From contig NW_003314307.1 of assembly GCF_000143415.4 (NCBI RefSeq), positions 1 to 64,000 of the forward strand: DNA of 64,000 bases, read 5' to 3'. Shown here in pieces: positions 14,301-48,370 of the stretch. A program made the translations under genes and the position numbers. The notes under the pieces were generated by a model. It did not search any database. It was not told where the DNA came from and saw nothing but the letters and a program-made list of their open reading frames with translations. Source of the DNA: Selaginella moellendorffii. Lineage: Eukaryota; Plantae; Lycopodiophyta. Every line of letters begins with the position of its first letter. Within the stretch, counting starts at the first letter, position 1.

Positions 14301-14402
14301 CAGACAAAGGCTAACAAAGGATTAGTGGCCACTTAGGAAGTCATAAAGGCAAGGATCCGTGCAACTTATGTTCCTCCAAATGCCACTCTACACCTAAGAG
14401 AT

Positions 14403-15930: not shown

Positions 15931-16020
15931 GAGATGAGTTGAGTAGGTTGAAGCAGATAAGAACCATTCAAGAGTATGTGAATAAGTTTATGGCAAAGAG
16001 GATCCTTGTTATAGACATGA

Positions 16021-16615
16021 TGTAAGCTCTTGAGTTTGGACTTCTCGGGAGGTCATCCAGCCCAGTACTATTCAACCCCAAGGACGCTTAACTTCAAGTA
16101 TCCCAAGACCCTAAACCGATTGGAAAAAGGGGTGCACTCTTGTTCATGGGCCCTTTCCCTCTATATTTGAACTTTTATGGATCGTCTCTCGAGTCGTTCC
16201 CTTTGGTTGCTTACAATCCACCACGCTTCCGTGCAAGTTCACACCCTCGTGAATGGAAGCTAAGAGCTACAGCTCTCCCGAGAGCCCCACTCTCTTGACA
16301 CCCTACCCCTCGGGTCGAGCCCAGTGGGAGCAAACTGGACCAGCCAGATGTCAATCAACATGTGGTGTGATTCCCCTAGCCAACCAATAGAGTTAGACTC
16401 GAGACCTCTCTGATACCAAATGTAAGCTCCTGAATTTGGACTTCCCAAGAGGTCACCCAGCCCAGTATTATTCAAACCCAAGGACACTTAACCCAAAATA
16501 TCCTAAGACCCTTAACCGATTGGAAAAGGGGGTGCATTCTTGTTCATGGGCCCTTTCCCTCTATATTTGAACCCCTATGGATCGTCTCTCGAGTTGTTCC
16601 CTTTGGTTGCTTACA
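16021..16615 (-). mobile_element. Cassandra-type TRIM, full length (LTRs 16021-16215 and 16421-16615; ~205-bp internal region)
   Basis: Two ~195-bp LTRs with a 5S-rRNA-like domain; PBS tggtatcagag on the minus strand at ~16408-16418; TSD CATGA/CATGG (one mismatch). Confidence 0.9.
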
Positions 16616-19600
16616 CATGGGTGACATGGATGTGTTCCATAACTTTATATTAGGCTTATAGAGTTAGGCTCAAGGCAAGGTGATACATTGAAACCCAACG
16701 AAGTATTGGATGTAGCTATTAAGGTGCATTTCAATAATAACCTATGAAAAAAAGAACATAAGGGGGTTGGGATCCACATTCAGCAAATGAGACAAAGTAA
16801 GAGGGATATATGGCAAAGGGAAATTCAAGAAAAGTTTCTCTAAGAGTGAATCCCCAAACAAGGCTAGAGTCAATATAGCCATTAAGTTTGGTGAAGTCCA
16901 AACTGAGGTATGTGATCTAGTTCCTAGCTGAAAGTAACTCATTAACTATGACATTTATTACCCTTCCGAGGGAAGATTAGAGATAGCTTTATTAAAATCT
17001 TTATTGACACAAATGCTTCAGATAATTTTGTGGTTACAGATATAGTCTGACAAGCCTGACTAATAGTGCAACTGTTGGGTGAACCAAGGACTATAAAGTT
17101 TATTCAAGGTAACTAAAGCACCAATGAGGTACTTTGACAAACAAGAGTCAAAGTAGAGATATAGAAAGTGGATATGGATTTCACCATATTAGACATGGCA
17201 GGATATTACATGATCTTTGAGATGGATTAATTTAATTAATTTGTGGTAGCCTTACATAGAAAAAGTAGGAACTTTGTGGTATTGACAAATGCTTGAAGAG
17301 AACAATTCAAGATGGATGCCCAAGATTTAAAGGTAGGGAAATGTAAGGCCAAAAACTCCTGCTTGAACCCGGTGTTTATGAGAAGATAACTCACAAAAGG
17401 AACCAAGGCAACATTTTCATGCTTACTCTCAATGGGGAGTGAGAAAAATGTGAAAATAAAGGAAATACCTTTAGTGATATAGCGGGAGTTAAACCAATTT
17501 CGAGATACTATGTTGGAGGAGTTACCCCTTACACCACCAATAGAATATAAGATTGAGCTAGTCAAAAGTGCTAATATAATGGTTTGTCACCCCTATTTGT
17601 TGAACAAAATAGAACTCAAGGAGCTTAACCATTAATTTGAGGAGTTGGTAGATAAAAGGTATATTAGGTTGAGCAAGTCATTGTATGGGGCACTGGTGTT
17701 ATTTGTGGAAAAGAAAGATAGCTTTATGCATATGTGTATAGACTACCAGTTGCTCAACAAGTATACAAAGAAGAACAAGTACTTATTCCCAAAGATTGAA
17801 AATTTGTTTGATAGGTTGGGAAATGCAAAATACTTCTCAAGGATTAACCTAAGCTCAGGATATTACTAAATCAATATAGTAAAGGAAGATGTTTAGAAAA
17901 TAACCTATGGGATAAGGTATGGAAGTTTTGAGTTTTTAGTGATGCCCTTTGGGTTGTGTAATGTGTTAGCAATGTTCTCGGCACTAATGAACCACATCTT
18001 TGTACCCCATTTGGATCATTTTATGGTCATTTATATTAATAACATCCCGATTTATAGTGAGATGCTAAAGGACCATGCCAAACACTTGATGAAAGTGTTT
18101 GAAAAACTAAGGGAACACAAACTATATGGTAAAGAGAGCAAATATGACTTTGCTCAACAAAAGGTAAAGTTTCTCGGGCATATGGTGGGTAAGGATGGGC
18201 TTAAGGTGGAGCCTGAGAAGGTCCAAGGGATCCAGGAATGTGAACGACTATTGAATATACATGAGTTAAGAGTGTTCTTGGGGCTACGCAACCACTATTA
18301 AAAGTTTATCAAACACTATTCCAGAGTAACTCTACCTTTAACAAACCAAATGGGGAAGATGGTATGGACAGCAGAATGCAAGATGGCATTTATCCACCTC
18401 AAAGGGAAATTGAGGAAGACTCCTATGTTGGCATTATTAGACTTTAGTAAAAATTTTGAGGTAAAAAGAGATGCTTCAAACTTTATGTTGGTGCAATTTT
18501 GAAACAAGATAACTAGCTAGTGGTATTCTTCTCAAAGAAGTTGGACAAGGCTCAGCGAAAGTAGCTTAATTATGAATAGGAACTATTTGTAGTGGTCAAG
18601 GCACTCAAAAAGTGGCGACACTACCTTGGGAGGCACTTCAAAGTTTACACGGATAATGTGGCAACAAAAAACTTCTTGTCACAGCTTGGCTTGTGATGAA
18701 AATAGAGTTAATGGGCAAATGCTTTGGCTGAGTTTAATTGTGAGATTTTGTATAAACTTATAGGAAGAGCAACATCATAACAAATGCTCTAAGTTGAAAA
18801 GTAAGCTTGAAGTTGGTGATGTCCAGTGTAACAACAATCTTTTTGGATGATGTGCGGACAATGTATGAAAATGATAGTCTAACATAAGAAGTGTTACTAA
18901 GGAACCAAAAGGTGCGGGATGCTCACCAAAGAGGTGAGCCATCTACAAAAGAGAAAATAGGTTATATGGAACGCAATAGACTCATCTATTATAAACAAAT
19001 GAGGGTGTATGTTCCACAAAAGGAACTAAGGAAGCTAGCCTTAGAAGAGTGTTATGACAAACCTCTTGCAGAACATGCGAAATGCCCAAGACGATAGGCT
19101 TACTCAAAATAAAGTATCACTGGCTAGATATAATTAAAGACGTCTAAGACAATGTAAAGACATGTCTAACATGTCAATAGGTCAAAGCCATAAGTAAGGC
19201 TAGTGGGGGTTTATTATAAAGCCTTTCAATTCCAAATCATTTGTAAAAATATTTTACAATGGACTTCATCACAAGACTCCTCCAAGTGAAACAATACTTA
19301 GGTGGTGGACTGATTTGGCACATTTCATACCCACCACAACAGAAGTGGATGCAGAAGGTGTGGCAAAGCTTTTCTTTGAAAAAATGGTTTAAGTGTGGGA
19401 AAGGCCAGAAAGAATTATCTTAGATTGAGATAAGTTTGATAGCTATAACACTTCTTGACAAATGGACAGACAAAAATGATGAATAGGCAGTTAGAGGATT
19501 ATTTATGATGTTATGTCTCTAGAGACCAGATGTAAGCAACCAAAGGGAACGACTTGAGAGACGATCCATGGGGTTCAAATATAGAGGGAAAGGGCCCATG

Positions 19601-19652
19601 AATAAGAGTGCACCCCCTTTTCCAATCGGTTAAGGGTCTTGGGATATTTGGG

Positions 19653-19707
19653 GTTAAGCGTCCTTGGGTTTGAATAGTACTGGGCTGGGTGACCTCCCGG
19701 GAAGTCC
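19653..19707 (+). ncRNA. 5S-rRNA-derived domain (Pol III internal control region) in the Cassandra LTR; not a full 5S gene
   Basis: gttaagcgtccttgggtttgaatagtactgggctgggtgacctcccgggaagtcc versus recalled plant 5S gttaagcgtgcttgggcgagagtagtactaggatgggtgacctcc(c/t)gggaagtcc, about 47/55 identical by eye. Confidence 0.9.
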
Positions 19708-19727
19708 AAACTCAGGAGCTTACAATT

Positions 19728-19739
19728 TGGTATCGGAGC
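19728..19739 (+). promoter_or_regulatory. Primer-binding site for initiator tRNA-Met
   Basis: TGGTATCGGAGC, 3 nt after the LTR end; the same motif occurs at 25377-25388 and 44780-44791 (-). Confidence 0.9.
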
Positions 19740-19783
19740 CTTTTCCTCAGTTCTAGCGAAGGATAGAGGCGGATTGCTGGGAG

Positions 19784-22700
19784 ATGGCAAGGGCAGGGCG
19801 TAAGCGAACCCAGGCGGAGACGGAACCTCCGCCAGAGCTGGAGCCTCCGGTCGAACAAGAGGCTATGGATGAGGAATCCTTGCATGAGGAGGACTCCAGT
19901 GAGGAAACCTCCAAACAGGAGTCCGGTGGCGAGGTTCGGTCGTCCAAGGCTCGATTGGACGTGCTAGAAGGACAGTTGGCACAGACCAATGCCCTGCTGG
20001 AAACTCTCGTACGCAAGCAAAAGCGTGACGAGAGGCGGAAGAAAAAGAAAAAGACTGCGGATGCTGGCAGCGCAGAAGGTGCGGATCTTTCGGCCGGGAC
20101 TGAGGCAAAACCAGACAAGGTCGAACAGACCGAAGTGGAATCAGTCCCTCAGGCAGTTCCCAAGTACAAACCAAAGCCCCCACCGGTCTTCAAGGGAGTG
20201 AATGACTATAAGGTGGTGGAGGATTGGTTTTACGATATGGAGGACTACTTCCGAGCGTTGCGGTTACCAAGCTCGGAGAAGGTCCCATGTGCAAAACCAT
20301 ACTTGGCAGATAATGCCAAGTCTTGGTGGAGAACAACGGAGGCCAACGAAGGACCGGTGGTCACTTGGGACATGATGAAGGCGAGGATCCGCGCAACATA
20401 TGTTCCTCCGAATGCCACTCTACATCTGAGGGATGAACTGAGTAGGCTGAAACAGACAGGAACCATCCAGGAATATGTGAATGGGTTCATGGCAAAGAGG
20501 ATACTTGTCACGGACATGGGGGATATGGATGCGTTCCATGCCTTCATATCAGGTTTGCAAACCTGGGCTCGCGGCGAGGTGATGAGGTGGAACCCGACCA
20601 ACTACAAGGAAGCGTTGGATGCGGCCATCAAGGTGCATTTCAACGATAACCTGCGAAAGGGGAACACGACGGGGTCGGGATCCACATTTAGCAAAGGGGC
20701 CAAACCAAGGGGAACGTATAGCAAGGGGAAATTCAAAAGGAGTTTCTCTAAGAATGAGTCCTCGGGGTTCCGGAAAGGCAAATCCGGTGGCCAGCGAGCG
20801 AGTACGTGGGGGAGTCAAGCGAAAAAGGACAAACCCACGGATAAGAAGGTCAAGTCGTATAGCAGCGTGGGAAACAACGTATGCTACAACTGCGGCGAAG
20901 CGGGACACTTCTCGAGGGAATGTCCCTACCCGAAGAAGGCCAGAGCCAATATGGCCATCAAGTCGGGTGAAGTCCAAATTGAGGTATGTGATCCAGTCCC
21001 TAACTCAAAGTTACTCATTACACGAGCAACTTTGGTAGAGAGTCGTTCGCGACATCTACTAGCCCTCCGAGGGAAGCTCGGAGGTAGCTTTGTTAAGATC
21101 CTTATTGACACGGGTGCTTCGGATAATTTTGTGGCTGCAGACATAGTCCGGCAAGCCGGACTAACGGTGCAGCGGCTAGGCGAACCAAGGACTATAGAGT
21201 TTGTTCAGGGTAGCCAAAGCACCGATGAGGTACTTCGACAAGCGAGAGTCGAAGTGGGGACATGGAAAGTGGACATGGATTTCACCGTCTTGGATATGGC
21301 GGGATTTGACGTGATCTTCGGAATGGATTGGTTTAATCGGTTCGTGGTAGCCCTGCATGGACAAGGTAGGAACCTTGTGGTATTGGCGAATGCCCAAGGA
21401 AGAAGATCTAGGGTGGAGGCCCAGGATCTAAAGGTAGGGCAAAGCAAGGCCAAAGAGTCATGCTTGAACCTGGTGTCCACGAGAGGACAACTCACTAAAG
21501 GAACTAAGGCAGCCTTTTTGTGCTTACTCTCGGTGAAGAGTGACAAAAAGACAAGAACGGAAGAAGTGCCTTTAGTGATCCAGCGAGTGTTGGACCAATT
21601 CCAGGATACCATGCCGGAGGAGCTACCGGCGGGGTTGCCCCCCGCACGACCGATAGAACATAAGATTGAGCTTGTCGAGGGCGCTGAGGCGGTGGTTCGT
21701 CCCCCCTATCGTTTGAACGAAAAAGAACTCAAGGAGCTCAAGTGCCAACTAGAGGAGTTGGTGCGCAAAGGGTATGTTAGGTTGAGCAAGTCGCCGTATG
21801 GGGCGCCGGTATTATTTGTGAAAAAGAAAGATGGATCTATGCGCATGTGCATAGATTACCGGTTGCTCAACAAGTATACCAAGAAGAACAAGTACCCGTT
21901 GCCAAGGATTGAGGACCTGTTCGATAGGTTGGGAAAGGCAAAATACTTCTCGAGGATTGACCTAAGGTCAGGATACTACCAGATCAGGGTAGCCGAGGAA
22001 GATGTCGAGAAGACAACCTGTCGAACGAGGTATGGGAGCTTTGAGTTTTTGGTGATGCCCTTTGGGCTGTGCAATGCGCCGGCAACGTTTTCGGCGTTGA
22101 TGAACCACGTCTTTGTACCCTATCTGGATCACTTTGTGGTCGTCTATATTGACGACATCCTGATCTATAGCGAGACGCTAGAGGAGCATGCCGAACACTT
22201 GGCGAAGGTGTTTGAGAAACTAAGGGAACATAAACTGTATGCTAAAGAGAGCAAATGTGACTTTGCTCAGCAAGAGGTAAAGTTTCTCGGGCATGTGGTG
22301 GGCCAGGACGGGCTCAAGGTGGACCCGGAGAAGGTCCAAGCGATCCAGGAATGGGAGCGACCATCGAATGTACATGAGTTGAGGGCGTTCTTGGGGCTAT
22401 GCAACTACTATCGAAAGTTTATCAGACACTATTCGAGAGTAGCCCTGCCCTTAACGGATCAAACGGGAAAAGGGAAGATGGTATGGACAGCGCAATGCGA
22501 GGCGGCATTCGTCCACCTCAAAGGGAAGTTGAGGAAGGCTCCGGTGTTGGCATTACCGGACTTTGGTAAGGACTTTGAGGTAGACACGGATGCTTCGGAC
22601 TTTGCGTTAGGCGCAGTTTTGAAGCAAGACAACCATCCAGTAGCGTTCTTCTCGAAGAAGCTGGACAAGGCTCAACGGAAGTGGCCTGCCCACGAGAAGG

Positions 22701-23110
22701 AATTGTTTGCGGTGGTCAAGGCGCTCAAGGAGTGGCGACACTACCTTGGGAGACACTTCAAGGTTTACACGGACAATGTGGCAACGAAACACTTCTTGTC
22801 ACAACCCGACCTGAGAGGGAAACAAGGTCGGTGGGCCAATGCCTTGGCCGAGTTTGATTGCGAGATTCTGTACAAGCCTGGGAAGAGCAACATCGTGGCA
22901 GATGCGCTAAGTCGAAAAGCGAGCTTGAGGTTGGCGATCTCCAGCGCAACAGCAACCTTCTGGGACGATGTGTGGACAGCATATGAGAACGATGGTCTAG
23001 CACAAGAAGTGTTGTTGAGGAATCTGGAGGCACGGGAAGCTCACCAGAGAGGTGAGCCGCCAACGGAAGAGAAAACGGGCTATACATGTATCGTTCGAGT
23101 ATCGGGGTGA
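19784..23110 (+). CDS. Gag-PR-RT-RNase H polyprotein of the chimera, truncated by an integrase deletion
   Basis: [14 protein letters not shown] zinc knuckle, LIDTGAS protease, YIDD RT, DTDASD RNase H. Diverges from the intact copy at ~23083. Confidence 0.95.
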
Positions 23111-23821
23111 GTCCATGGGAAGTCATCAATGTGCGAGCTATTGAAGGTCCTGTGGAACTCGGCGTGGCCGAGTATCATGGAGAGTTACCCGCAGTGGAGG
23201 CATTCACGGCGGAAAGACTCAACATTTGGAATCTAGTGAGGGATTCCTTGGAACGGGCTCAACAAAGGCAAACCAAGTACGCGAACCTAAAGCGCCGTGA
23301 CGTAGAGTTCCAAGCTGGGGAGAAGGTGTGGCTGAACACCAAGAACCTTAGGCTACCAAGTGGGATCAGCCGAAAGTTGACCGAAAGGTAAAAATGCATG
23401 TATTCCTGTAAATGAATTGATCTTGAGTTCCTTAAGCAGGTTTGCGGGGCCTTACGAGATTGAGGCACGAATCGGTAAAGTGGCTTACCGACTCCGACTT
23501 CCTCGAGAGATGGGGAAGATGCACCCAGTGTTCCATGTGAACTTACTCAAGCCGTACTTTGAGGATCCGCTTCGCAAAGACCAAGTAAGACCTTTACCTG
23601 AGGTTATCCAAGGGGAAGAGGAATACGAAGTCGAGGCCATCCTCAATGCGCGCAAGAGCAAGCGACAAGGACGCGAGGTGAGAGAGTTCCATGTGAAGTG
23701 GAAAGGATTTCCACACTGCGAAGCAACATGGGAACCGGAGGAGAACCTAGCGAACGCGCGAGATCTAGTGGAGGAATTTCTGCAAGGCAGAACTCTATGT
23801 ACTTATGCAAAGTTCAATTAA
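23095..23821 (+). pseudogene. Residual integrase C-terminus (GPY motif) and chromodomain, with intron 23388-23439
   Basis: SRKLTER|FAGPYEI joins across GT...AG; YEVEAILN...VKWKGF...ATWEPEENL chromodomain. Confidence 0.85.
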
Positions 23822-23958
23822 AAATATCAATTTGCAAAGTTGAGCAAGTGGCATATGTTGGGACCCGAAGGCGCGCCAAAGGTGAGCTAATTAGCATGGG
23901 TTAGCTAGGTCGACCAGGCGTAGGGAGCTACGCCCGACTTCCTGCGGGGATGTCGAAA

Positions 23959-24034
23959 CCGTAGACGTATTCTACGGAGGTTGGGTTCGAGTCCCAACCC
24001 CCTAGTAAAGCAAGGCTGGGTTCAAGTCCCGACC
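23959..24034 (+). other. Hairpin cluster with two tRNA T-arm/B-box-like stem-loops in the family A 3'UTR
   Basis: ccgtaga-cgtat-tctacgg; ggttggg-TTCGAGT-cccaacc; ggctggg-TTCAAGT-cccgacc. Confidence 0.6.
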
Positions 24035-24225
24035 CCATACTAGGGCGTGGTGAGGGGTGGAGTATAGGGACACCTATATTCCGTTGTCATGAGCTCTTGG
24101 CCGGGGAGGCTAACTTAGGCACACCGCTAAGTGGGGGGATGCCCCCGGAGACATGGTCAACAAGTCGTAGGATAAAAAAGAGACGTTCGATGTGGGCATC
24201 GAACTTCTTCTATGGGTGGTGGAGT

Positions 24226-25373
24226 TGTAAGGAACCAACTCGCCGAGGTGTCGTAGGCTAAGGGAACCCTGAAAGCATGACCAAAATGACAAAGAGTTCA
24301 TCGGATGGGACCAAGTCAAAGATCGAGTCCAAGACCGACTCTAGGACCGAGTTCGAGATCGAGTCCGGAATCGAGTCCGAGACCGACTCGGGGACCGAGT
24401 TCGAGTCCGAGTTCGAGACCGAGTTCGAGACGGAGTCCGAGATCCGAAATCGGGTCCGAGACCGAGTCCGAAGTCGAGTCCGAGGTCGGGCCCGAGATCG
24501 GGTCCGAGATCGAGTCCGCGATCGAGTCCGAGACCGAATCCGAAGTCGGATCCGAAATCGGATCCGAGATCGAGCCAGAGACTAAGTCCAAATACTAATA
24601 CGGGTCAAGGGGTGAAAGCCCAAAGCGTGCGTCCCCCAGGGGGGGGGGGCTGCAGGGGGTTCCAAAAGTATAGTAGGGATAGTGAGGTCCAGGAACCAGT
24701 TTTGAAGGGACTCTCCAGTTGGGCTTCCAAACCGACTTGAGGTTGGGACTGGGACTAAGGGGCCTTGGGTGGGAGTGAGCATGGACTTGGCTGGTGCCGG
24801 AGGGGCCATCCAAGGAAGTGCTCAAGAGCAGCTCCCACTCCCGAAAGGGAAACCGATTGCGGTGCTCCCGGCTCATGTGGAGTGGTGCCCCACTTGAGTA
24901 CCATGCGGCTCATTGGTCCTCGCCCTTCCAAGGGGCTTGGGCCTTCCTTCGGGATGGAAGTGGGGGGCGAGAGGTACCCATACCGGGCCGTTAGGCCACG
25001 GTGTTTCGCCCCGGCGTCCCGAAGCAAGTGTTGCACTCAAGACTTGGGATTTAGAGGGTCCCATGATCAAGTCTTGTGGTACCAAGGGATGTTAGGAACC
25101 TGGAAGCTTGGTGTGCTTGGCTGCTTGTGCTTGCGGGGAGTGTAGCCGAACCTTAAGTCCAGTCTAACCCGGGGAGGGGGATTGGGAGTGATTTGGGAAT
25201 CCGTGGAAGGATGGCTAACACTCCGTTGCTCGTGCAGTGAGTAGCTGAAACCAAGTAGGAGCTGGTACCATAGGCGAGAACCTTGGCAAGGGAACTTGGC
25301 AAAAGCCAAGGCAGTGTTGGACGGATAGACGAGGTAAGCTGGCAAATTGGAAAGGAAAAATTTGTGGCTTACA
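24226..25373 (+). repeat. Family A LTR (1148 bp) inside the chimera, with a 12-bp GAGATCGAGTCC-type array at ~24320-24590
   Basis: TGTAAG...GCTTACA; preceded by PPT-like gggtggtggagt; near-identical to LTRs 38408-39556 and 44795-45943. Confidence 0.95.
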
Positions 25374-26799
25374 ATTTGGTATCGGAGCGGTCTCGGGTCC
25401 GACTCTGTTGGTTGGCTAAGGGAATCACACCACATGTTGATTGACATCTGGCTGGTCCAGTTTGCTCCCGTTGGGCTCGACCCGAGGGGTAGGGTGTCAA
25501 GAGAGCGGGGCTCTCAGGAGAGCTGCGGCTCTCAGCTTCCGTTCACGAGGGCGTGAACTTGCAGGGAAGCGTGGTGGATTGTAAGCAACCAAAGGGAACG
25601 ACTTGAGAGACGATCCATGGGGTTCAAATATAGAGGGAAAGGGCCCATGAATAAGAGTGCACCCCCTTTTCCAATCGGTTAAGGGTCTTGGGATATTTGG
25701 GGTTAAGCGTCCTTGGGTTTGAATAGTACTGGGCTGGGTGACCTCCCGGGAAGTCCAAACTCAGGAGCTTACACCAGACTAATCAGGTAAATCATTTGGG
25801 ACTTGCGGAAATGTGTTATAACAACTCACCACATTCAAGTATCGAGGTGAGTCCATAGGAAGTTATCAATAGGCGAGATATTGAAGGTTTTGTGGAACTT
25901 GGTATGGTCAAGTATCATGAAGAGTTACTTGCAATAGAAGCTTTCACGGTAGAAAGACTCAACATTTGGAATTTAGTGAGGTATTCATTAGAACAAGCTT
26001 AACAAAGGCAAATTAAATATGCAAACCAAAAACACCAGGACGTGGAGTTCCAACTTGAGGAGAAGGTGTGGCTAATCCCAGATAAAATACACCAGCCACA
26101 CCCTTAGAATGGTAACACTAAAGTTACTAAGTAGGATTAGTCAGATGTTGAGCCACATGTATTCTTGGAAATGAACTAATCTTGAGTTCTTTAAGAAGAT
26201 TTGCAAGGCCTTATAGGATTAAGGCTCAAATGGTAAAGTGGTTTACCACCTTTGACTTCTTTGGGAGATTGGGAAGATGCACCTTGTGTTCCATGTGAAC
26301 TTACTAAAACCATACTTTGAGGATTTGCTTCACAAGGACTAAGTAAAACTTTTAGGTTATCCAAGGGGAAGAGGAATATGAGGTCAAGGCCATCCTCAAT
26401 ATACGCAAGAGCAAGTGACAAATATGGGTGTTCTATGTTAAGTGAAAAGGATTTCCACTCTGCAAAGTAACATGGGAATTGGAGAAGAACCTAGGAAACA
26501 CACGAGATCTAGTGGAGGAATTTTTGCAAGGTAGAACTTTATGTACTTATCAAAACTCAATGAAAGTATGTATTTGTGAAATTGAGCAATATCATATATT
26601 AGGACTTGAAGGTGTACCAAAGATAATCTAATTAGCATGAGTTAGCTAGGTCAACCAGGAGTATAGAGATACACTTGACATCCCACGGGAATGTCAAATT
26701 CGTATATATATTCTACGAAGGTTGGGTTCGAGTCCCAACCCCCTAGTAAAGCAAAGTTGGGTTCCAGTCTCAACCCTATACTAGGGCGTGGTGAGATGA

Positions 26800-37134: not shown

Positions 37135-38407
37135 TGTGAGACACAAATCCCTAACCCCCAAAGTGGACTTAAAGCAAAAGCCAAACAAACATATCACATT
37201 TGGACTAAAAGCTCCAATTTGAAAAGTCAAGAGTGGGAGTTCCTCCACCGTTTAACAAAGGTGGAAGGTTGGGAGAGTACAACTCAAGTAAGGCCACGAT
37301 ATTCCAAAATGTTGTCCCAAAGTCCCGAATTGTGGAAAGGAAGAAGAGCAATTCTCTAGTGTAAAGACCAAAAGTAAAGGGTTCCAAAAGGATAGTAGGG
37401 AGAGTGGGGGTTGGACCCCAGTGGAACCAATTTGGGCAGGAAAGGCTAGTTTGGCCCAGGAAGGCCATACCTAGCTATAGGGTGATGGGGTAACCACTGG
37501 GAAGTCCAAGGCTAGAGTGAATACAAACCGATAAACAGGGTAGCTTGGTGAAGTGCTCAAAAGCCGGCTCTAGTTCTCCGGGAGATCGAATGGTCGATGC
37601 TCCCAATCCAAGCATGGGTGGCATTGCCTACTTGGATACTTGGCATTGCTCAAAGGAACCTCACTCTAAGCCCATGGCTAGAGCACCCAAAAGCGGAAGC
37701 CCATGAGGCTTGCGTAGGGCCACGGTGTTCGGAAATGCTGTCCCAAAGTCCTAGACTATGGAAAGGAAGAGGAGTGGTCCTCTAGTGTAGTGACCAAGGA
37801 TACGGTCAAGTGATGAGGAAGTCCCAGAGGACAGTGGGACTTAATGGTCGGGCCTGTGGGCCTTGTCCTAGTGGCAGTGTTGGCAAACATGGATAGAAAA
37901 GGGACTTAATGAGGATTGTAAAAGGGATATTGGGGAAGGTTGTTCATCATGTCTGCAGGCATTTTAAGGATGCTAAGGAGTGGATCTAGGATGATCACTC
38001 ATGGACAGATGGCCCAGTCTTTGAGAGATAAGAGTGCAATGCAGGTGGTGTTGGATCACCAGTGTGACCAAGGTGAATGGGCATGGTCTTAGTGTAATGG
38101 GCTGATATATCCATGGTACCTTGCGGTGTTAGTCATAGGATCAGACATTAGAGCACTTGGACCAAGTGCAAAGGTTGAGTGGCATAGATGCCATTCTCGG
38201 GGGTAGCAAGCCCCAAGTCCTTAATTGGACTTATGGAGGTTGTAAAGAGACTCCTTCAAATGGTCGGAGGTATGGTTAAGTGACTAAAGTAGAATGGAAA
38301 AATTAATCACTTACAATTTAGTATCAGAGCTATTCCTTAGTCCAACTTTTATTGGTGCTCAAATATATCACCATTAGTGTTGGCATTGGAAGGTCCTAGG
38401 AGTGGGC

Positions 38408-41400
38408 TGTAAGCCACAAATTTTTCCTTTCCAATTTGCCAGCTTACCTCGCCTATCCGTCCAACACCGCCTTGGCTTTTACTAAGTTCCCTTGCCAAGG
38501 TTCTCGCCTATGGTACCAGCTCCTACTTGGTCTCAGCTACTCACTGCACGAGCAACGGAGTGTTAGCCATCCATCCACGGATTCCCAAATCACTCCCAAT
38601 CCCCCTCCCCGGGTTAGACTGGACTTAAGGTTCGGCTACACTCCCCGCAAGCACAAGCAGCCAAGCACACCAAGCTTCCAGGTTCCTAACATCCTTTGGT
38701 ACCACAAGACTTGATCATGGGACCCTCTAAATCCCAAGTCTTGAGTGCAACACTTGCTTCGGGACGCCGGGGCGAAACACCGTGGCCTAGCGGCCCGGTA
38801 TGGGTACCCCTCGCCCCCCCACTTCCATCCCGAAGGAAGGCCCAAGCCCCTAGGCAGGGCGAGGACCAATGAGCCGCATGGTACTCAAGTGGGGCACCAC
38901 TCCACATGAGCCGGGAGCACCGCAATCGGTTTCCCTTTCGGGAGTGGGAGCTGCTCTTGAGCACTTCCTTGGATGGCCCCTCCGGCACCAGCCAAGTCCA
39001 TGCTCACTCCCACCCAAGGCCCCTTAGTCCCAGTCCCAACCTCAAGTCGGTTTGGAAGCCCAACTGGAGAGTCCCTTCAAAACTGGTTCCTGGACCTCAC
39101 TATCCCTACTATACTTTTGGAACCCCCTGCAGCCCCCCCCCCCTGGGGGACGCACGCTTTGGGCTTTCACCCCTTGACCCGTATTAGTATTTGGACTTAG
39201 TCTCTGGCTCGATCTCGGATCCGATTTCGGATCCGACTTCGGATTCGGGTTCGGACTCGATCGCGGACTCGATCTCGGACCCGATCTCGGGCCCGACCTC
39301 GGACTCGATTTCGGACTCGGTCTCGGACCCGATTTCGGATCTCGGACTCCGTCTCGAACTCGGTCTCGAACTCGGACTCGAACTCGGTCCCCGAGTCGGT
39401 CTTGGACTCGATTCCGGACCCTATCTCGAACTCGGTCCTAGAGTCGGTCTTGGACTCGATCTTTGACTTGGTCCCATCCGATGAACTCTTTGTCATTTTG
39501 GTCATGCTTTCGGGGTTCCCTTAGCCTACGACACCTCGGCGAGTTGGTTCCTTACAACTCCACCACCCATAGAAGAAGTTCGATGCCCACATCGAACGTC
39601 TCTTTTTTATCCTACGACTTGTTGACCATGTCTCCGGGGGCATCCCCCCACTTAGCGGTGTGCCTAAGTTAGCCTCCCCGGCCAAGAGCTCATGACAACG
39701 GAATATAGGTGTCCCCATACTCCACCCCTCACCACGCCCTAGTATAGGGTCGGGACTTGAACCCAGCCTTGCTTTACTAGGGGGTTGGGACTCAAACCCA
39801 ACCTCCGTAGAATACGTCTACGGGTTCGACATCCCCGCAGGGAGTCGGGCGTAGCTCCCTACGCCTGGTCGACCTAGCTAACCCATGCTAATTAGCTTAC
39901 CTTCGGCGCGCCTTCGGGTCCCAACATATGCCACTTGCTCAACTTTGCAAATATATATATTTTTAATTGAACTTTGCATAAGTACATAGAGTTCTGCCTT
40001 GCAGAAATTCCTCCACTAGATCTCGCGCATTCGCTAGGTTCTCCTCCGGTTCCCATGTTGCTTCGCAGTGTGGAAATCCTTTCCACTTCACATGGAACTC
40101 TCTCACCTCGCATCCTTGTCGCTTGCTCTTGCGCGCATTGAGGATGGCCTCGACTTCGTATTCCTCCTCCCCTTGGATAACCTCAGGTAAAGGTCTTACT
40201 TGGTCCTTGCGAAGCGGATCCTCAAAATACGGCTTGAGTAAGTTCACGTGGAACACGGGATGCATCTTCCCCATCTCTCGAGGAAGTCGGAGACGGTAAG
40301 CCACTTTACCGATTCGAGCCTCAATCTCGTAAGGCCCCGCGAACCTGCTTAAGGAACTCAAGATCAATTCATTTACAGGAATACATGCATTTTTACCTTT
40401 GGGTCAACTTTCGGCTGATCCCACTTGGTAGCCTGAGGTTCTTGGTGTTCAGCCACACCTTCTCCCCAGCTTGGAACTCTACATCCCGGCGCTTTAGGTT
40501 CGCGTACTTGGTTTGCCTTTGTTGAGCCCGTTCCAAGGAATCCCTCACTAGATTCCAAATGTTGAGTCTTTCCGCCGTGAATGCCTCCACTGCGGGTAAC
40601 TCTCCATGATACTCGGCCACGCCGAGTTCCACAAGACCTTCAATAGCTCGCCCATTGATGACTTCCCATGGACTCACCCCGATACTCGAATGTGGTGAGT
40701 TGTTATAACACATTTCCGCAAGTCCCAAATGACTTACCCAATCGGTCTGGTCTCCCGAGACATAGCATCGCAAATAATCCTCCAGCTGCCTATTCACCCT
40801 TTCCGTTTGTCCGTCTGTCAAGAAGTGTTAGGACCACCAAACTTGACTTAATACCCCATACCTGTCTGTGGGTGATAGGCTGTGCTGAATTTCAACTTGG
40901 TGCGATACTGTTCCAGGAGGGTCCTCCAGAACCTACTAGTGAAGATCTTATCTCGATCTGAGATAATCTCTTCTGGCCTTCCCCGCACTCGAACCACTTG
41001 TTCGAAGAACAGCTTCGCCACACCTTCCGCATCCACTTCCGTTGTGGTGGGTATGAAATGTGCCATCTTCGAAAATCGATCCACCACCACGAATATCGCA
41101 TCGAACCCCTCGCTTGGGGGTAGTCCCGTGATGAAGTCCATCGTAAGACATTTCCACGGACGATCTGGAATTGGGATGCTTTGCAACAAGCCCCCACTAG
41201 CCTTAGTCACGGCTTTGACTTGCTGACATGTTGGACATGTCTTTACATAGTCCTGGACGTCCTTAGCCATATCTGGCCAATGGTACTTCCTCTTGAGTAA
41301 GCCCATCGTCTTGGGCACTCCGCCGTGTCCCGCAAGAGGTCCGTCATGACACTCTTCTAAGGCTACCTTCCTTAGTCCCCCTTCTGGAACATATACCCTC

Positions 41401-44400
41401 GTTTGCTTGTAATAAATGAGTCCGTTGCGTTCCGCATAGCCCGTTTTCTCTTCCGTTGGCAGCTCACCTCTCTGGTGAGCTTCCCGCGCCTCCAGATTCC
41501 TCAGCAACACTTCTTGTGCTAGACCATCACTCTCGTATGCGGTCCGCACATCGTCCCAAAAGGTTGCTGTCGCGCTAGATATCGCCAACTTCAAGCTCGC
41601 TTTTCGACTGAGCGCATCTGCCACGATGTTGCTCTTCCCAGGCTTGTACAGGATCTCGCAATCAAACTCGGCCAAAGCATTGGCCCACCGACCTTGTTTT
41701 CCCCTTAGGTCGGGCTGTGACAAGAAGTGTTTCGTTGCCACATTGTCCGTGTAAACCTTGAAGTGTCTCCCAAGGTAGTGTCGCCACTCCTTGAGCGCCT
41801 TGACCACCGCAAACAATTCCTTCTCGTGGGCAGGCCACTTCCGTTGAGCCTTGTCCAGTTTCTTCGAGAAGAACGCTACTGGATGGTTGTCTTGCTTCAA
41901 AACTGCGCCCAACGCAAAGTCCGAAGCGTCCGTGTCTACCTCAAAGTCCTTACCAAAGTCTGGTAATGCCAACACCGGAGCCTTCCTCAACTTCCCTTTG
42001 AGGTGGACGAATGCCGCCTCGCATTCCGCTGTCCATACCATCTTCCCTTTTCCTGTTTGGTCCGTTAAGGGCAGGGCTACTCTCGAATAGTGTCTGATAA
42101 ACTTTCGATAGTAGTTGCATAGCCCCAGGAACGCCCTCAACTCATGTACATTCGATGGTCGTTCCCATTCCTGGATCGCTTGGACCTTCTCCGGGTCCAC
42201 CTTGAGCCCGTCCTGGCCCACCACATGCCCGAGAAACTTTACCTCTTGTTGAGCAAAGTCACATTTGCTCTCTTTAGCATACAGTTTGTGTTCCCTTAGT
42301 TTCTCAAACACCTTCGCCAAGTGTTCGGCATGCTCCTCTAGCGTCTCGCTATAGATCAGGATGTCGTCAATATAGACGACCACGAAGCGATCCAGATAGG
42401 GTACAAAGATGTGGTTCATCAACGCCGAAAACGTTGCCGGCGCATTGCACAGCCCAAAGGGCATCACCAAAAACTCAAAGCTCCCATACCTCGTTCGACA
42501 GGTTGTCTTCTCGACATCTTCCTCAGCTACCCTGATCTGGTAGTATCCTGACCTTAGGTCAATCCTCGAGAAGTATTTTGCCTTTCCCAACCTATCGAAC
42601 AGGTCCTCGATCCTTGGCAAAGGGTACTTGTTCTTCTTGGTATATTTGTTGAGCAACCGGTAGTCTATGCACATGCGCATAGATCCATCTTTCTTTTTCA
42701 CAAATAGCACCGGCGCCCCATACGGCGACTTGCTCAACCTAACATACCCTTTGTCCACCAACTCCTCTAGTTGGCTCTTGAGCTCCTTGAGTTCTTTTTC
42801 GTTCAATCGATAGGGTGGACGAACCACCGCCTCAGCACCCTCGACCAGCTCAATCTTATGTTCTATCGGTCGTGCGGGGGGCAATCCCGCCGGTAGCTCC
42901 TCCGGCATCGCATCCTGGAATTGGTCCAGCACCTGCTGGATCACTAAAGGTACTTCTTCCGTTCTTGTCTTTTTGTCACTCTTTACCGAGAGTAAGCACA
43001 AAAAGGCTGCCTTAGTTCCTTTAGTGAGTTGTCCTCTCGTGGACACCAGGTTTAAGCATGACTCTTTGGCCTTGCTTTGCCCTACCTTTAGATCCTGGGC
43101 CTCCACCCTAGATCTTCTTCCTTGGGCATTCGCCAATACCACAAGGTTCCTACCTTGTCCATGCAGGGCTACCACGAACCGATTAAACCAATCCATTCCG
43201 AAGATCACGTCAAATCCCGCCATGTCCAAGACGGTGAAATCCATGTCCACTTTCCATGTCCCCACTTCGACTCTCGCTTGTCGAAGTACCTCATCGGTGC
43301 TTTGGCTACCTTGAACAAACTCTATAGTCCTTGGTTCGCCTAGCCGCTGCACCGTTAGTCCGGCTTGCCGGACTATGTCTGCAGCCACAAAATTATCCGA
43401 AGCACCCGTGTCAATAAGGATCTTAACAAAGCTACCTCCGAGCTTCCCTCGGAGGGCTAGTAGATGTCGCGAACGACTCTCTACCAAAGTTGCTCGTGTA
43501 ATGAGTAACTTTGAGTTAGGGACTGGATCACATACCTCAGTTTGGACTTCACCCGACTTGATGGCCATATTGGCTCTGGCCTTCTTCGGGTAGGGACATT
43601 CCCTCGAGAAGTGTCCCGCTTCGCCGCAGTTGTAGCATACGTTGTTGCCCACGCTGCTATACGACTTGACCTTCTTATCCGTGGGTTTGTCCTTTTTCGC
43701 TTGACTTCCCCACGTACTCGCTCGCTGGCCACCGGATTTGCCTTTCCGGAACCCCGAGGACTCATTCTTAGAGAAACTCTTCTTGAATTTCCCCTTGCTA
43801 TATGTTCCCCTCGGTTTGGCCCCTTTGTGAAACGTGGATCCCGACCCCGTCGTGTTCCCCTTTCGCAGGTTATCGTTGAAATGCACCTTGATGGCCGCAT
43901 CCAACGCTTCCTTGTAGTTGGTCGGGTTCCAGCGCATTACCTCACCGCGAGCCCAGGTTTGCAAACCTGATATAAATGCATGGAACGCATCCATATCCCC
44001 CATGTCCGTGACAAGTATCCTCTTTGCCATGAACCCATTCACATATTCCTGGATGGTTCCAGTCTGCTTCAGCCTACTCAACTCATCTCTCAGATGCAGA
44101 GTGGCATTCGGAGGAACGTATGTCGCGCGGATCCTCGCCTTCATCATGTCCCAGGTGGCCACCGGTCCTTCGTTGGCCTCCGTTGTTCTCCACCAAGACT
44201 TGGCATTATCTGCCAAGTATGGTTTTGCACATGGGACCTTCTCCGAGCTCGGTAACCGCAACGCTCGGAAGTAGTCCTCCATATCGTAAAACCAATCCTC
44301 CACCACCTTATAGTCGTTCACTCCCTTGAACACCGGTGGGGGCTTTGGTTTGTACTTGGGAACTGCCTGAGGGACTGATTCCACTTCGGTCTGTTCGACC

Positions 44401-45943
44401 TTGTCTGGTTTTGCCTCAGTCCCTGCCGAAGGGTCCGCACCTTCTGCGCTGCCAGCATCCGCAGTCTTTCGCTTTTTCTTCCGCTTCTCGTCACGCTTTA
44501 ACTTGCGTACGAGAGTCTCCAGCAGGGCATTGGTCTGTGCCAACTGTCCTTCTAGCACGTCCAATCGAGCCTTGGACGACCGAACCTCGCCACCGGACTC
44601 TTGTTTGGAAGTTTCCTCACTGGAGTCCTCCTCATGCAAGGATTCCTCATCCATAGCCTCTTGTTCAACTGGAGGCTCCAGCTCCGGCGGAGGTTCCGTC
44701 TCCGCCTGGGTTCGCTTACGCCCTGCCCTTGCCATCTCCCAGCAATCCGCCTCTATCCTTCGCTAGAACTGAGATAAAGGCTCCGATACCAAATTGTAAG
44801 CCACAAATTTTTCCTTTCCAATTTGCCAGCTTACCTCGCCTATCCGTCCAACACCGCCTTGGCTTTTACTAAGTTCCCTTGCCAAGGTTCTCGCCTATGG
44901 TACCAGCTCCTACTTGGTCTCAGCTACTCACTGCACGAGCAACGGAGTGTTAGCCATCCATCCACGGATTCCCAAATCACTCCCAATCCCCCTCCCCGGG
45001 TTAGACTGGACTTAAGGTTCGGCTACACTCCCCGCAAGCACAAGCAGCCAAGCACACCAAGCTTCCAGGTTCCTAACATCCTTTGGTACCACAAGACTTG
45101 ATCATGGGACCCTCTAAATCCCAAGTCTTGAGTGCAACACTTGCTTCGGGACGCCGGGGCGAAACACCGTGGCCTAGCGGCCCGGTATGGGTACCCCTCG
45201 CCCCCCCACTTCCATCCCGAAGGAAGGCCCAAGCCCCTAGGCAGGGCGAGGACCAATGAGCCGCATGGTACTCAAGTGGGGCACCACTCCACATGAGCCG
45301 GGAGCACCGCAATCGGTTTCCCTTTCGGGAGTGGGAGCTGCTCTTGAGCACTTCCTTGGATGGCCCCTCCGGCACCAGCCAAGTCCATGCTCACTCCCAC
45401 CCAAGGCCCCTTAGTCCCAGTCCCAACCTCAAGTCGGTTTGGAAGCCCAACTGGAGAGTCCCTTCAAAACTGGTTCCTGGACCTCACTATCCCTACTATA
45501 CTTTTGGAACCCCCTGCAGCCCCCCCCCCCTGGGGGACGCACGCTTTGGGCTTTCACCCCTTGACCCGTATTAGTATTTGGACTTAGTCTCTGGCTCGAT
45601 CTCGGATCCGATTTCGGATCCGACTTCGGATTCGGGTTCGGACTCGATCGCGGACTCGATCTCGGACCCGATCTCGGGCCCGACCTCGGACTCGATTTCG
45701 GACTCGGTCTCGGACCCGATTTCGGATCTCGGACTCCGTCTCGAACTCGGTCTCGAACTCGGACTCGAACTCGGTCCCCGAGTCGGTCTTGGACTCGATT
45801 CCGGACCCTATCTCGAACTCGGTCCTAGAGTCGGTCTTGGACTCGATCTTTGACTTGGTCCCATCCGATGAACTCTTTGTCATTTTGGTCATGCTTTCGG
45901 GGTTCCCTTAGCCTACGACACCTCGGCGAGTTGGTTCCTTACA
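38408..45943 (-). mobile_element. Intact young Ty3/gypsy chromovirus (family A), 7536 bp
   Basis: LTRs 38408-39556 and 44795-45943 (1149 bp, apparently identical); TSD TGGGC at 38403-38407 and 45944-45948; iMet PBS; PPT; domain order PR-RT-RH-INT-chromodomain. Confidence 0.97.
39963..44735 (-). CDS. Gag-Pol polyprotein; predicted spliced exons 44735-40862, 40814-40397 and 40344-39963 (1557 aa)
   Basis: Removing introns 40815-40861 and 40345-40396 restores [14 protein letters not shown] and KLTQR-FAGPY. HHCC, D-D-E, GPY and chromodomain then lie in one frame (4674 nt, divisible by 3). Confidence 0.9.
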
Positions 45944-48370
45944 TGGGCCTATCCTTGAGGAGTAGCAAGTTGGGAAGACATGGCTCTCCACTATAGTTCA
46001 TGTGTGAACTTGTAAGTGAGGTGGCAGATAGAAAAGGGCCAATAATGGAATGACTTCGGGATCTTGGGAATAGTATAAAGTTTTCCTCAAAGTGTTGATG
46101 ATGTAATCCAAATAAGCATTTGACTTAGCAAACTGACTAATGTAGTTGCGGTAAACAACTATAGTTGGGATCACGGAAAAGATAGAGACTCCAAAACAAT
46201 AAAGGAGTCACAAGATTATCCTCATATAATTGAGGCTGGTGCTCATGAATTTGAAACCAGAATTAATGACCATGAGAGGTGATATACGGATGAGGACACA
46301 AGTCCTTGAAATGGTAGCCAAGGCTACCTTTAATAAATGCTAGAACAACCTAAAGAATTAGGGGTGTACTTAGAGGATGAGTTGGTATTTTCATCACATG
46401 TACAAATAGTCCTAAAGGGCAAAGGTGGCCCATATGAAACAAAGAATAATCAAGTGTCAGTAACACTTGCAAGAATGGTCCTTATATGTGGTATATGAAT
46501 ACAAGAAGTTGTATTCTAACGAGCTGGCACCTCAAAAATGGGACCTTATAGGTCATCAAATTAGTGAATCCAAAAAGCTAGATAACTCAAGTGAAGTTAA
46601 GGAATGGTCTCAAAAGACTGGTGGAAGCATTTGGACTAAGGTGTGTTATACCCTATGAAGATTGGGGATGATCATAAGATCCAAGTGTGAGAACAATAAG
46701 TATCTCATTAATGGTAGAATGTGCCATATTAAAGTTATAGGAAAGAGGTTCCCAGAAGAAAGCAACTTTGTTACAAAGTTGTGTGTAAACTATAAGGTGT
46801 AATGTTAACGGATAGTTGGTATGAGAAACAACTATATTGGTCTTGGCAAAGACCTAGACACAAGTAACTTCATGTCATAAAGGTAGGCTCGTAGAGCTGA
46901 TAGTGTGGAGACACCGAATGTGCTAACGCATGATGCTTTGAGGTCAAGTTGGCAGGTTCATGAGAACCCTTTCCCAAAGGAATAGTAATGGAAATAGGAA
47001 TGGCATAACCTAAGCTAGAAAGCATGCAATTAGAGTGTGGTAACCCAAAATAATGATGGAGGTGTGAAAGCACCAACAATGAGTTGTAGGATTTGACAAC
47101 TGTGAGGCAACTAAACAAAAATGTGCAAAATAATTGATTAAAGTGGTAGAAGGTAACTACATAAGACTTCTTATTGGGATAAGGAAGTTAGACATACCCT
47201 TATAGAGGATAAATTGCTCATGTTCCAATAATAAATCAATATCATAAAGGGAATGTTTATTGCCAAAGAAGGCCATTATTAGGACACCCAAACACTCTAA
47301 AACATTAGGAAGTGGTGTTTAGTGTCGTGAGGGCATTAGATAAGGTCCAAAGGATTAAGTCCTTAGTGAATGATAGATAGGAGGTGCTATCCAAACATAC
47401 AAGGTTGCAAAGATGGGAGAAGTTCGTCTACCCAAATTAGACAAAGCCAAAAAGGGATTTTTGCAAGGCTAGTCAAGGGCATATAAAGGCTCATAAGTAG
47501 CAACATTAATCCCAGTGTGTAAGATTACAAAGTGAGTATACCTAAATTGAGAAACCACTCCCTAAGCTATCAGGTAGGTTCATCCCTATGAATACTTGCT
47601 AAGGCATGATAGAAAGTGTAAAGCTATCCTCCTAGTTTTGAGGAGAATGACCGAAGGAAACATATGAGGCCTAAAAGCAAGTAATAAAGAGATAAAACTA
47701 AATCACAAGAATCGAAGGGCATAACCAAGAGTGGTTATGCAAAATTGAGAGTGGAGAATCAAGTGGGGGCTCAAGGAGTTTATTATTAGCAACTGTGATG
47801 CTATAGAGAGTTTAAATATAGAATTATCCATGTTAGACCATGTGGTAATTAGAAAGCTTGCAAAAAGAGAAGCCTCAGCAAGCTAAGGAACAAAGTTCCT
47901 TCAAAGTTCCCAAAGACAATTCTAGGTAGATAAGTACTTAAAAAACCAAGTGTAAATGGTTCATAAAGTGCACAAAATTAGAGTGGTGCAATAGAAGCGT
48001 GGTCTTGAAGCTTGCCATGAGGTGAGGCTATCAAGGTTAGGGAAGTAGTTCCCAAGTGTTCAAAGAGAGAATTTTGAATGAAAGTCGATGGTTAAGAACT
48101 TTCAAACTTATGTATGAACCATATTACGATGGTCGGATGATTTGCTAGGTAAGATTGGTAAGTCGGGGGAACAAATACCCTAGTTGAAGGTGCTAACTTC
48201 AAAAGGGGTAACTCATGGGGCCAAACATGGAGGAGTCCATGCATGATCATAGATATGTCAAGTGAGAGGACTTGAGAGTGCGGAGGAAGTAAGTTTCTAA
48301 GCTGTGATCTATAGTGCACTTTAAGTATAAATTGGTGCACCGATGTGGGGAGTCACATCAGGCATCTTAT

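What the first reader, a model, noticed from the sequence alone, without database searches (positions are those of the whole stretch)
40345..40861. Intron-gated integrase: two spliceosomal introns inside a recently active LTR retrotransposon
Seen (minus strand): a 47-nt intron, 40815-40861 (GTATGG...CTAAC...TTGACAG), splits HPQT|DGQTER just before the catalytic E. A 52-nt intron, 40345-40396 (GTAAAA...AAGCAG), splits KLTQR|FAGPY. Each carries an in-frame stop and a non-3n length, and removal restores canonical motifs exactly. The LTRs look identical, so the intron-containing RNA was recently reverse-transcribed. The 52-nt intron recurs at 23388-23439, and remnants of both survive in the old copy (~19446-19461, ~26155-26198). 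Retrotransposition should purge introns, so the inference is that unspliced RNA is selectively packaged while spliced mRNA supplies integrase in trans. That would suit parasites such as Cassandra. Known precedents (Ogre PR-RT intron, copia gag splicing) differ; I know of none inside the integrase core.
Basis: partly seen in the sequence, partly recalled or inferred. Interest (0 to 1): 0.95.

Follow-up and report, generated by a model that had tools for sequence, protein, structure and literature searches.

The report
Intron-bearing integrase in a young chromovirus
A freshly inserted, very abundant jumping gene (an LTR retrotransposon, apparently of the spikemoss Selaginella) carries two tiny host-type introns inside its integrase gene. 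It can therefore make a complete integrase only if the cell splices its RNA, yet copying through RNA has not removed the introns; actual splicing could not be seen in the RNA data at hand.

Summary
An intact Ty3/gypsy chromovirus lies on the minus strand at 38408-45943, with 1149-bp LTRs that are 100% identical, a 5-bp target-site duplication, a PBS and a PPT. Its single gag-pol frame is interrupted by a 47-nt (40815-40861) and a 52-nt (40345-40396) GT..AG segment.

Evidence that these are introns:
- Removal restores exact collinearity with more than 50 homologous polyproteins.
- Their sizes match two host introns inferred in the same window (54 and 49 nt), and they are AT-richer than the exons.
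- The exons downstream of them are under strong purifying selection: 13 synonymous versus 4 non-synonymous differences between two young copies, p=4e-6.
- A decayed copy, about 19% diverged, still holds remnants of both.
- A fern relative is intronless at both sites.
- DNA contigs of the species show a very abundant family and no abundant intron-less junction.

So these are very probably real spliceosomal introns that persist through retrotransposition.

Splicing itself was not seen. The RNA runs are almost silent for this family, and the only RNA-like contig and one read retain intron 1. Selective packaging of unspliced RNA is therefore inference, and it follows the Ogre precedent. The Cassandra link is unsupported.

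The scan has flagged other copies of this family many times on other DNA, and one follow-up agent reached the same reading. I rate it a new variant of a known kind, interest 0.6.

The parts
45944..45948 (.). target-site duplication (TGGGC), upstream side of the element
   Evidence: the same pentamer lies at 38403-38407
44795..45943 (-). 5' LTR, 1149 bp, TG..CA
   Evidence: 100% identical to 38408-39556
44779..44791 (-). primer-binding site TGGTATCGGAGCC, 3 nt after the LTR
   Evidence: It resembles the plant initiator-tRNA-Met PBS (from memory); the host tRNA was not available
44763..44834 (-). candidate leader intron: GAG|GTAAGC at 44834, acceptor CAG at 44769 (66 nt) or TAG at 44763 (72 nt). 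It would remove the end of U5 and the PBS
   Evidence: The donor is conserved in the copy B LTR. A prediction only
40862..44735 (-). exon 1: gag (capsid, zinc knuckle), protease, RT, RNase H, integrase zinc finger and core up to HPQT
   Evidence: 79 synonymous / 23 non-synonymous differences against copy B
43481..43535 (-). candidate 55-nt alternative intron inside ORF1 at the gag/protease border (GAG|GTATGT..CTAAC..GGTAG). Removal would shift the frame and give Gag plus 7 residues
   Evidence: A prediction only
40815..40861 (-). intron 1, 47 nt, phase 1, GTATGG..CTAAC..GACAG, 57% AT
40397..40814 (-). exon 2: rest of the integrase core, including the catalytic Glu (DGQTER)
40345..40396 (-). 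intron 2, 52 nt, phase 2, GTAAAA..AAGCAG, 67% AT
39963..40344 (-). exon 3: integrase C-terminal SH3-like (GPY/F) module, chromodomain and stop codon
   Evidence: PF24626, PF00385. 10 synonymous / 1 non-synonymous against copy B
39557..39570 (-). polypurine tract next to the 3' LTR
38408..39556 (-). 3' LTR
38403..38407 (.). target-site duplication (TGGGC), downstream side
23388..23439 (+). intron 2 in a second young copy (copy B, 19718-25373). A 745-bp deletion in that copy removes the intron 1 region
19431..19460 (+). remnant of the 3' part of intron 1 in a decayed copy
26156..26195 (+). remnant of intron 2 in the same decayed copy; its 5' splice site is deleted

Best explanation
The element is an autonomous, recently active Ty3/gypsy chromovirus. 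An ancestor of the family acquired two short U2-type spliceosomal introns inside the integrase gene.

The unspliced full-length transcript encodes Gag-PR-RT-RNase H plus an integrase cut off four residues before its catalytic Glu. Only the doubly spliced mRNA encodes the complete integrase, with its C-terminal SH3-like module and chromodomain.

New copies keep both introns. The RNA that is packaged and reverse-transcribed must therefore be the unspliced one, and proteins made from spliced mRNA complete the particle.

Shown: the anatomy, the precision of the two insertions, their persistence through retrotransposition, and selection on the downstream exons.
Inferred: that splicing occurs in vivo, that it is partial, and that spliced RNA is kept out of replication.
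For: - Intact element with 100% identical LTRs, a TSD, a PBS and a PPT.
- Complete domain set across the three exons.
- Canonical GT..AG ends, with G|GTATGG and G|GTAAAA donors and a CTAAC box.
- Exact collinearity after removal with 50+ homologues and with an intronless fern locus.
- Introns are 57% and 67% AT against 48% in the exons.
- Two host introns inferred in the same window are 54 and 49 nt. The host's intron length distribution is reported to be of the short, fungus-like type (PMC6157073; host identity from other agents' notes).
- Differences between two young copies are mostly synonymous in exon 1 (79:23). Downstream of the introns they are 13:4 (p=3.7e-6); exon 3 alone is 10:1.
- 26 of 30 of the best-supported family-wide coding variants are synonymous.
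- Intron remnants survive in a copy about 19% diverged.
- Among the 15 best-supported joints in DNA contigs of a very abundant family, none is an intron-less junction.
Against: - No spliced read or contig was seen. The raw RNA-seq runs are nearly silent for the family (7 and 1 reads).
- One 614-nt RNA-like contig and about one read run through intron 1 unspliced.
- The census of intron-less copies rests on truncated tables of short contigs, in which some joints were not counted.
- Intron 2 lacks a clear branch-site match.
- Only three copies could be compared directly.
- No significant RNA structure was found that could serve as an intron-resident packaging signal.
Confidence: 0.65

Rival explanations
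1. The segments are real introns, but 'gating' of integrase is not the point. They persist because they are spliced inefficiently, or because intron-bearing transcripts are better exported or expressed, or escape RNA silencing or surveillance. No dedicated mechanism excludes spliced RNA from packaging.
For: - The only RNA-like evidence shows intron 1 retained.
- Intron 2 has weak branch and pyrimidine signals.
- No structured element lies in or around the introns.
- Links between splicing and silencing are known elsewhere, for example stalled spliceosomes triggering siRNA in Cryptococcus (cited in PMC6643885).
Against: If spliced RNA were packaged even occasionally, a family this abundant should hold a visible fraction of intron-less copies. 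None ranks among the best-supported joints. Both introns also survived in young and old copies alike.
Confidence: 0.2
2. The segments are inert insertions in a non-autonomous sublineage. Its integrase is dead, and it is mobilised in trans by intron-less autonomous relatives.
For: - Unspliced, the integrase is truncated before its catalytic Glu.
- No splicing was detected.
- This copy carries two private non-synonymous changes in exons 2-3 relative to the family majority.
Against: - Exons 2-3 are open and show 13 synonymous versus 4 non-synonymous differences between copies that both carry intron 2.
- Insertions with exact GT..AG ends, host-intron size and precise frame restoration, twice over, are not expected from random damage.
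- No abundant intron-less form appears in the DNA contigs.
Confidence: 0.1
3. An assembly or alignment artefact, or chance GT..AG pairs.
For: None found.
Against: - The same segments occur in three copies in the window.
- They occur in independent DNA contigs and in an RNA-like contig.
- The junctions are exact against 50+ homologues.
Confidence: 0.02

Closest known systems
Ogre LTR retrotransposons of legumes (Ty3/gypsy, Tat lineage)
   Same: An LTR retrotransposon whose complete polyprotein can be translated only after an intron is removed. [quoted passage not shown]
   Different: [quoted passage not shown] Here there are two roughly 50-nt introns inside the integrase catalytic core and before its C-terminal module. 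This element is a chromodomain-bearing chromovirus with one continuous gag-to-integrase frame. Splicing has been shown experimentally for Ogre but not here.
Ty1/copia elements with a spliced gag-only subgenomic RNA (copia, BARE, EVADE)
   Same: They use host splicing to make different products from one transcript. The unspliced RNA is the replication template (PMC5580714, PMC3735527, PMC12786077).
   Different: There, the unspliced RNA encodes the whole polyprotein and splicing removes pol. Here, splicing is needed to complete pol.
Retroviruses, errantiviruses and Cer1
   Same: Unspliced genomic RNA must be exported and packaged although it contains splice sites (PMC10309623).
   Different: Their splicing serves env or accessory genes. 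Gag-Pol, including integrase, is read from the unspliced RNA.
Penelope-like elements
   Same: Retroelements that keep introns after retrotransposition (PMC8557442).
   Different: They are a different class, with target-primed reverse transcription, no LTRs and no integrase. Their retention is attributed to their unusual mechanism.

Membership tests
Ty3/gypsy chromovirus (LTR retrotransposon) | Two LTRs ending TG..CA, flanked by a short target-site duplication | tested here: met
   1149-bp LTRs, 100% identical, 5-bp TSD TGGGC
Ty3/gypsy chromovirus (LTR retrotransposon) | Domain order gag-PR-RT-RNase H-IN | tested here: met
   Pfam matches in that order along ORF1
Ty3/gypsy chromovirus (LTR retrotransposon) | Chromodomain at the integrase C-terminus | tested here: met
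   PF00385, E=1.3e-16, in exon 3, after PF24626 SH3_Tf2-1
Ty3/gypsy chromovirus (LTR retrotransposon) | PBS complementary to a host tRNA 3' end, and a PPT | tested here: inconclusive
   TGGTATCGGAGCC lies 3 nt after the LTR and a purine tract lies before the 3' LTR.
U2-type spliceosomal intron | GT..AG ends with consensus-like donor and acceptor | tested here: met
   G|GTATGG..GACAG| and G|GTAAAA..AGCAG|
U2-type spliceosomal intron | Branch-site motif upstream of the acceptor | tested here: inconclusive
   intron 1 has CTAAC 12 nt before the acceptor, and the family's majority variant keeps it. Intron 2 has no clear match
U2-type spliceosomal intron | Length and composition like the host's own introns | tested here: met
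   host introns inferred at 61582-61635 (54 nt) and 62857-62905 (49 nt); the introns are AT-richer than the exons. PMC6157073
U2-type spliceosomal intron | Removal restores frame and collinearity with intronless homologues | tested here: met
U2-type spliceosomal intron | Removal observed in RNA | tested here: inconclusive
   too few RNA reads. One RNA-like contig and about one read retain intron 1, and no joint was seen
Ogre-type intron-bearing LTR retrotransposon | [quoted passage not shown] | tested here: not met
   one continuous frame from gag to the integrase core, and a chromodomain is present
Non-autonomous LTR element (LARD/TRIM-like) | Lacks its own intact coding capacity | tested here: not met
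   all domains are present, the exons are open and under purifying selection

The most novel reading that the evidence does not exclude
The family uses host splicing as a switch between messenger and genome. Full integrase comes only from spliced RNA, and spliced RNA is actively barred from replication. One possible bar is a third, leader intron (44834->44769 or 44763) that deletes the primer-binding site.

The introns themselves may have entered by reverse splicing into the element's RNA followed by its own reverse transcription. That would make this a natural system for testing that model of intron gain.
Probability: 0.3. Interest if true: 0.8.

Novelty: new variant of a known kind. Interest (0 to 1): 0.6.

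Why it matters
Textbook logic, and the classic Ty1 intron experiment, say that copying through RNA strips introns. A recent review lists only Ogre and EVADE as intron-bearing plant LTR retrotransposons (PMC12786077).

Here a high-copy, apparently still active chromovirus has kept two introns in the catalytic heart of its integrase over a long history. That extends the phenomenon to another lineage and another gene. It ties integration competence to the host spliceosome, and it implies a way to keep spliced RNA out of virus-like particles.

It also offers a tractable case for studying how introns are gained: the insertions are precise, sit at AG|R sites, and are flanked by 4-5-nt repeats.

Tried and rejected
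- **RNA evidence.** Raw RNA runs X22 and X23 gave 7 and 1 reads. The X17 contigs (RNA is only a guess) cover the element at depth about 5, retain intron 1 and show no joint. Splicing is therefore neither shown nor excluded.
- **Close relatives in protein collections.** The word-indexed search with the integrase part of ORF1 gave nothing above 54% identity. The search with exon 2 gave nothing close. The exhaustive representative search with exon 2 reached at most 49% identity. No junction-spanning product of this family could be recovered. The repeated protein offset of 11 probably reflects a Met in the usual [11 protein letters not shown] stretch of such integrases (motif from memory, not checked on the hits), not an intron.
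- **Exact look-up of the exon 2 ORF.** Not on record.
- **Homologues ending at the intron 1 site**, which would hint at the same intron in other species: none found.
- **RNA structure in or around the introns.** z-scores were -1.5 to +1.1, so none.
- **Intron sequences elsewhere in the window** (introner or MITE origin): found only in copies of this family.
- **Rfam on the whole window.** No hit, so no 5S-like 'Cassandra' signature.
- **Host identification with the flagellar gene.** The atlas search was uninformative and the homology search was blank because of the length window. The species name rests on other agents' notes plus my indirect clues.
- **A third host intron near 63340.** It could not be placed consistently with the reading frames and was dropped.
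- **Script detail.** In one search the two halves of the decayed copy were joined, leaving out the nested insertion, solely to align them. Nothing was printed or saved as a sequence.

Full report
**What is there**

The finding lies in a complete LTR retrotransposon on the minus strand, 38408-45943 (7536 bp).
- Its two 1149-bp LTRs (38408-39556 and 44795-45943) are identical at every position. They end TG..CA and are flanked by a 5-bp target-site duplication, TGGGC.
- Three nucleotides after the 5' LTR comes TGGTATCGGAGCC. From memory, this differs at one position from the usual plant initiator-tRNA primer-binding site.
- A purine tract precedes the 3' LTR.
- One reading frame of 1295 codons (44735-40848) holds capsid, zinc knuckle, protease, reverse transcriptase, RNase H, the integrase zinc finger and the integrase core.
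- The element is 51-56% GC and sits in a 34-42% GC landscape of older, nested repeats.

**The two segments**

- Intron 1 (40861->40815, 47 nt, GTATGG..CCTAAC..TTGACAG) splits an Asp codon between HPQT and GQTER. The second catalytic Asp (in ISDRD) and the Glu of GQTER are 35 residues apart, so the segment lies four residues before the third catalytic residue. Read through, the frame ends after four codons.
- Intron 2 (40396->40345, 52 nt, GTAAAA..TTAAGCAG) splits an Arg codon between KLTQ and FAGPY. Read through, the next codon is a stop.
- Exon 2 (40814-40397) is the rest of the integrase core.
- Exon 3 (40344-39963) matches the Tf2-type SH3-like C-terminal domain and a chromodomain.

**Are they more than chance?**

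I translated the three exons separately and compared them with the polyproteins returned by the homology search.
- In every homologue where the pieces align contiguously (more than 50), exon 1 ends and exon 2 begins with exactly one residue between them, which is the split codon. The same holds for exons 2 and 3 wherever both alignments reach the ends.
- At the DNA level, a chromovirus locus of the fern Adiantum nelumboides has the three pieces in one frame, each separated by a single codon. It is therefore intronless at both sites.
- The segments are thus precise insertions into an otherwise collinear gene. They sit at AG|R sites and are flanked by short repeats (GACAG, and AG|GT).
- They are AT-richer (57% and 67%) than the exons (48%). 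They occur nowhere else in the window outside copies of this family.

**Do they fit the host?**

The window ends in a host gene for a CFAP65/hydin-like flagellar protein. Reading-frame continuity places two of its introns at 61582-61635 (54 nt) and 62857-62905 (49 nt). Both are inferred, not checked against RNA.

Other agents' notes on this genome name it Selaginella moellendorffii (unchecked notes). My indirect clues are compatible with that: a flagellar gene, introns of about 50 nt, and about 210 Mb of contigs in the DNA run. That species' intron length distribution is reported to cluster with fungi and to differ sharply from other land plants (PMC6157073). Introns of 47 and 52 nt are therefore ordinary for this host.

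**Selection**

A second young copy lies at 19718-25373 on the plus strand. It is 97-98% identical, and a 745-bp deletion removes its intron 1 region.

| Region | Synonymous : non-synonymous | omega |
|---|---|---|
| Exon 1 | 79 : 23 | 0.08 |
| Exon 2 | 3 : 3 | 0.30 |
| Exon 3 | 10 : 1 | 0.03 |

- This copy has no stop codon in the aligned parts.
- For the two exons downstream of the introns, 13 of 17 changes are synonymous where about 23% are expected. This gives p=3.7e-6.
- Both copies carry intron 2, identical at 52 of 52 positions, so these exons have been translated in lineages that carry the intron. Splicing is the only plausible route to that. Read-through would have to pass two stops and a frame shift in intron 1, and an immediate stop in intron 2.
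- Across the family, 26 of the 30 best-supported coding variants in DNA contigs are synonymous.

**Persistence**

A decayed copy lies at 14308-19530 and 25773-26795 and is split by a nested insertion.
- It is about 19% diverged. 74% of its changes are G>A or C>T, and it has 40 stops.
- It still holds the 3' part of intron 1 and most of intron 2.
- The summed depth of the DNA contigs of the species laid on the element is enormous (60,594 contigs). Most contigs carry a variant of intron 1 that keeps the CTAAC box.
- None of the 15 best-supported joints is a 47- or 52-nt skip.
- The caveats are that the tables are truncated, some joints were not counted and the contigs are short. An abundant intron-less subfamily would nonetheless have been the strongest joint.
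- Many first-reader notes on other pieces of this genome report the same pair of introns, mostly with the same 517-nt span. One follow-up agent reached the same reading. These are leads, not independent evidence.

**RNA**

This is the weak point.
- In two raw RNA-seq runs, 9.2 million records each gave 7 reads and 1 read on 5.4 kb of the element, with no joint.
- By the depth table, about one read runs through intron 1.
- In a run guessed to be RNA, contigs cover most of the element at depth about 5. One 614-nt contig spans 40392-41000 without a gap, so intron 1 is retained.
- This fits unspliced genomic RNA or DNA carry-over. It neither shows nor excludes splicing.
- No significant RNA structure lies in or around the introns.

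**How it most likely works**

Shown:
- The element is intact, young and autonomous-looking.
- Its integrase gene holds two precise, host-type intervening sequences.
- The sequences downstream are kept by selection.
- The introns survive retrotransposition.

Inferred:
- The spliceosome removes them from part of the transcripts.
- Spliced mRNA yields Gag-Pol with complete integrase and chromodomain.
- Unspliced RNA yields Gag-PR-RT-RNase H with a truncated integrase and is the RNA that is packaged and copied.
- Why spliced RNA leaves no intron-less progeny is unknown.

In the same element I noted a strong donor in U5 (GAG|GTAAGC at 44834). Its acceptors, 66 or 72 nt downstream, would delete the primer-binding site. 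The donor is conserved in the other copy's LTR. If used together with the integrase introns, it would make spliced RNA unable to prime reverse transcription. This is a prediction only.

**Comparison with what is known**

- Ogre is the closest. [quoted passage not shown]
- A 2025 review states that plant LTR retrotransposons generally lack introns, with Ogre and EVADE as exceptions (PMC12786077).
- Penelope-like elements are called highly unusual among retroelements for retaining introns (PMC8557442).
- My searches found no report of introns inside an LTR-retrotransposon integrase. The library lacks most subscription journals.
- I therefore rate this a new variant of a known kind, not a new principle.

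**Verdict**

The intron reading is well supported by sequence and evolutionary evidence but not by RNA. The packaging and gating mechanism is a reasonable inference with a precedent. The Cassandra remark is unsupported: Rfam finds nothing 5S-like in the window. Interest 0.6.

Noticed in passing
window 44763-44834 (-): Candidate leader intron. A strong donor GAG|GTAAGC lies in the last 40 nt of the 5' LTR, with acceptors CAG (66 nt) or TAG (72 nt) just past the primer-binding site. Splicing would remove the PBS. In most copies of the family, two variants (44774, 44775) make the tract before the acceptor more pyrimidine-rich.
   Followed up: partly
window 43481-43535 (-); copy B 20984-21038 (+): A 55-nt GT..AG segment inside ORF1 at the gag/protease border (GAG|GTATGT, CTAAC, GGTAG). 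Removal would shift the frame and end translation 7 codons later, giving a Gag-only product like the subgenomic RNAs of copia-type elements. The donor is kept in the decayed copy.
   Followed up: partly
window 19531-25773 (+): The second young copy has no 5' LTR of its own. It starts at the last 7 nt of the LTR plus the PBS, directly after a 194-bp sequence (19531-19724) that is repeated 100% at 25580-25773. Its 3' LTR (24226-25373) is again followed by the same PBS. This looks like a chimera of the chromovirus with a small LTR element that shares its PBS. Rfam finds no 5S rRNA-like sequence, so the name 'Cassandra' given by other readers is not supported here.
   Followed up: partly
window 38408-45943 vs 19718-25373: Synonymous sites differ by about 12% between the two young copies. 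The LTR, 3' UTR and intron 2 differ by only 1.6%, 2.2% and 0%. The non-coding parts are far more conserved than silent coding sites. Either they are strongly constrained or the copies are recombinants.
   Followed up: no
window 60637-64000 (+): Host gene for a CFAP65/hydin-like flagellar Ig-repeat protein, with very long exons and introns of about 50 nt.
   Followed up: partly
window 40112 and 40634: This copy carries Cys and Leu where nearly all copies of the family have Arg and Pro. Both are C>T changes on the coding strand, in exons 3 and 2. This particular copy may therefore encode a slightly impaired integrase despite its identical LTRs.
   Followed up: no
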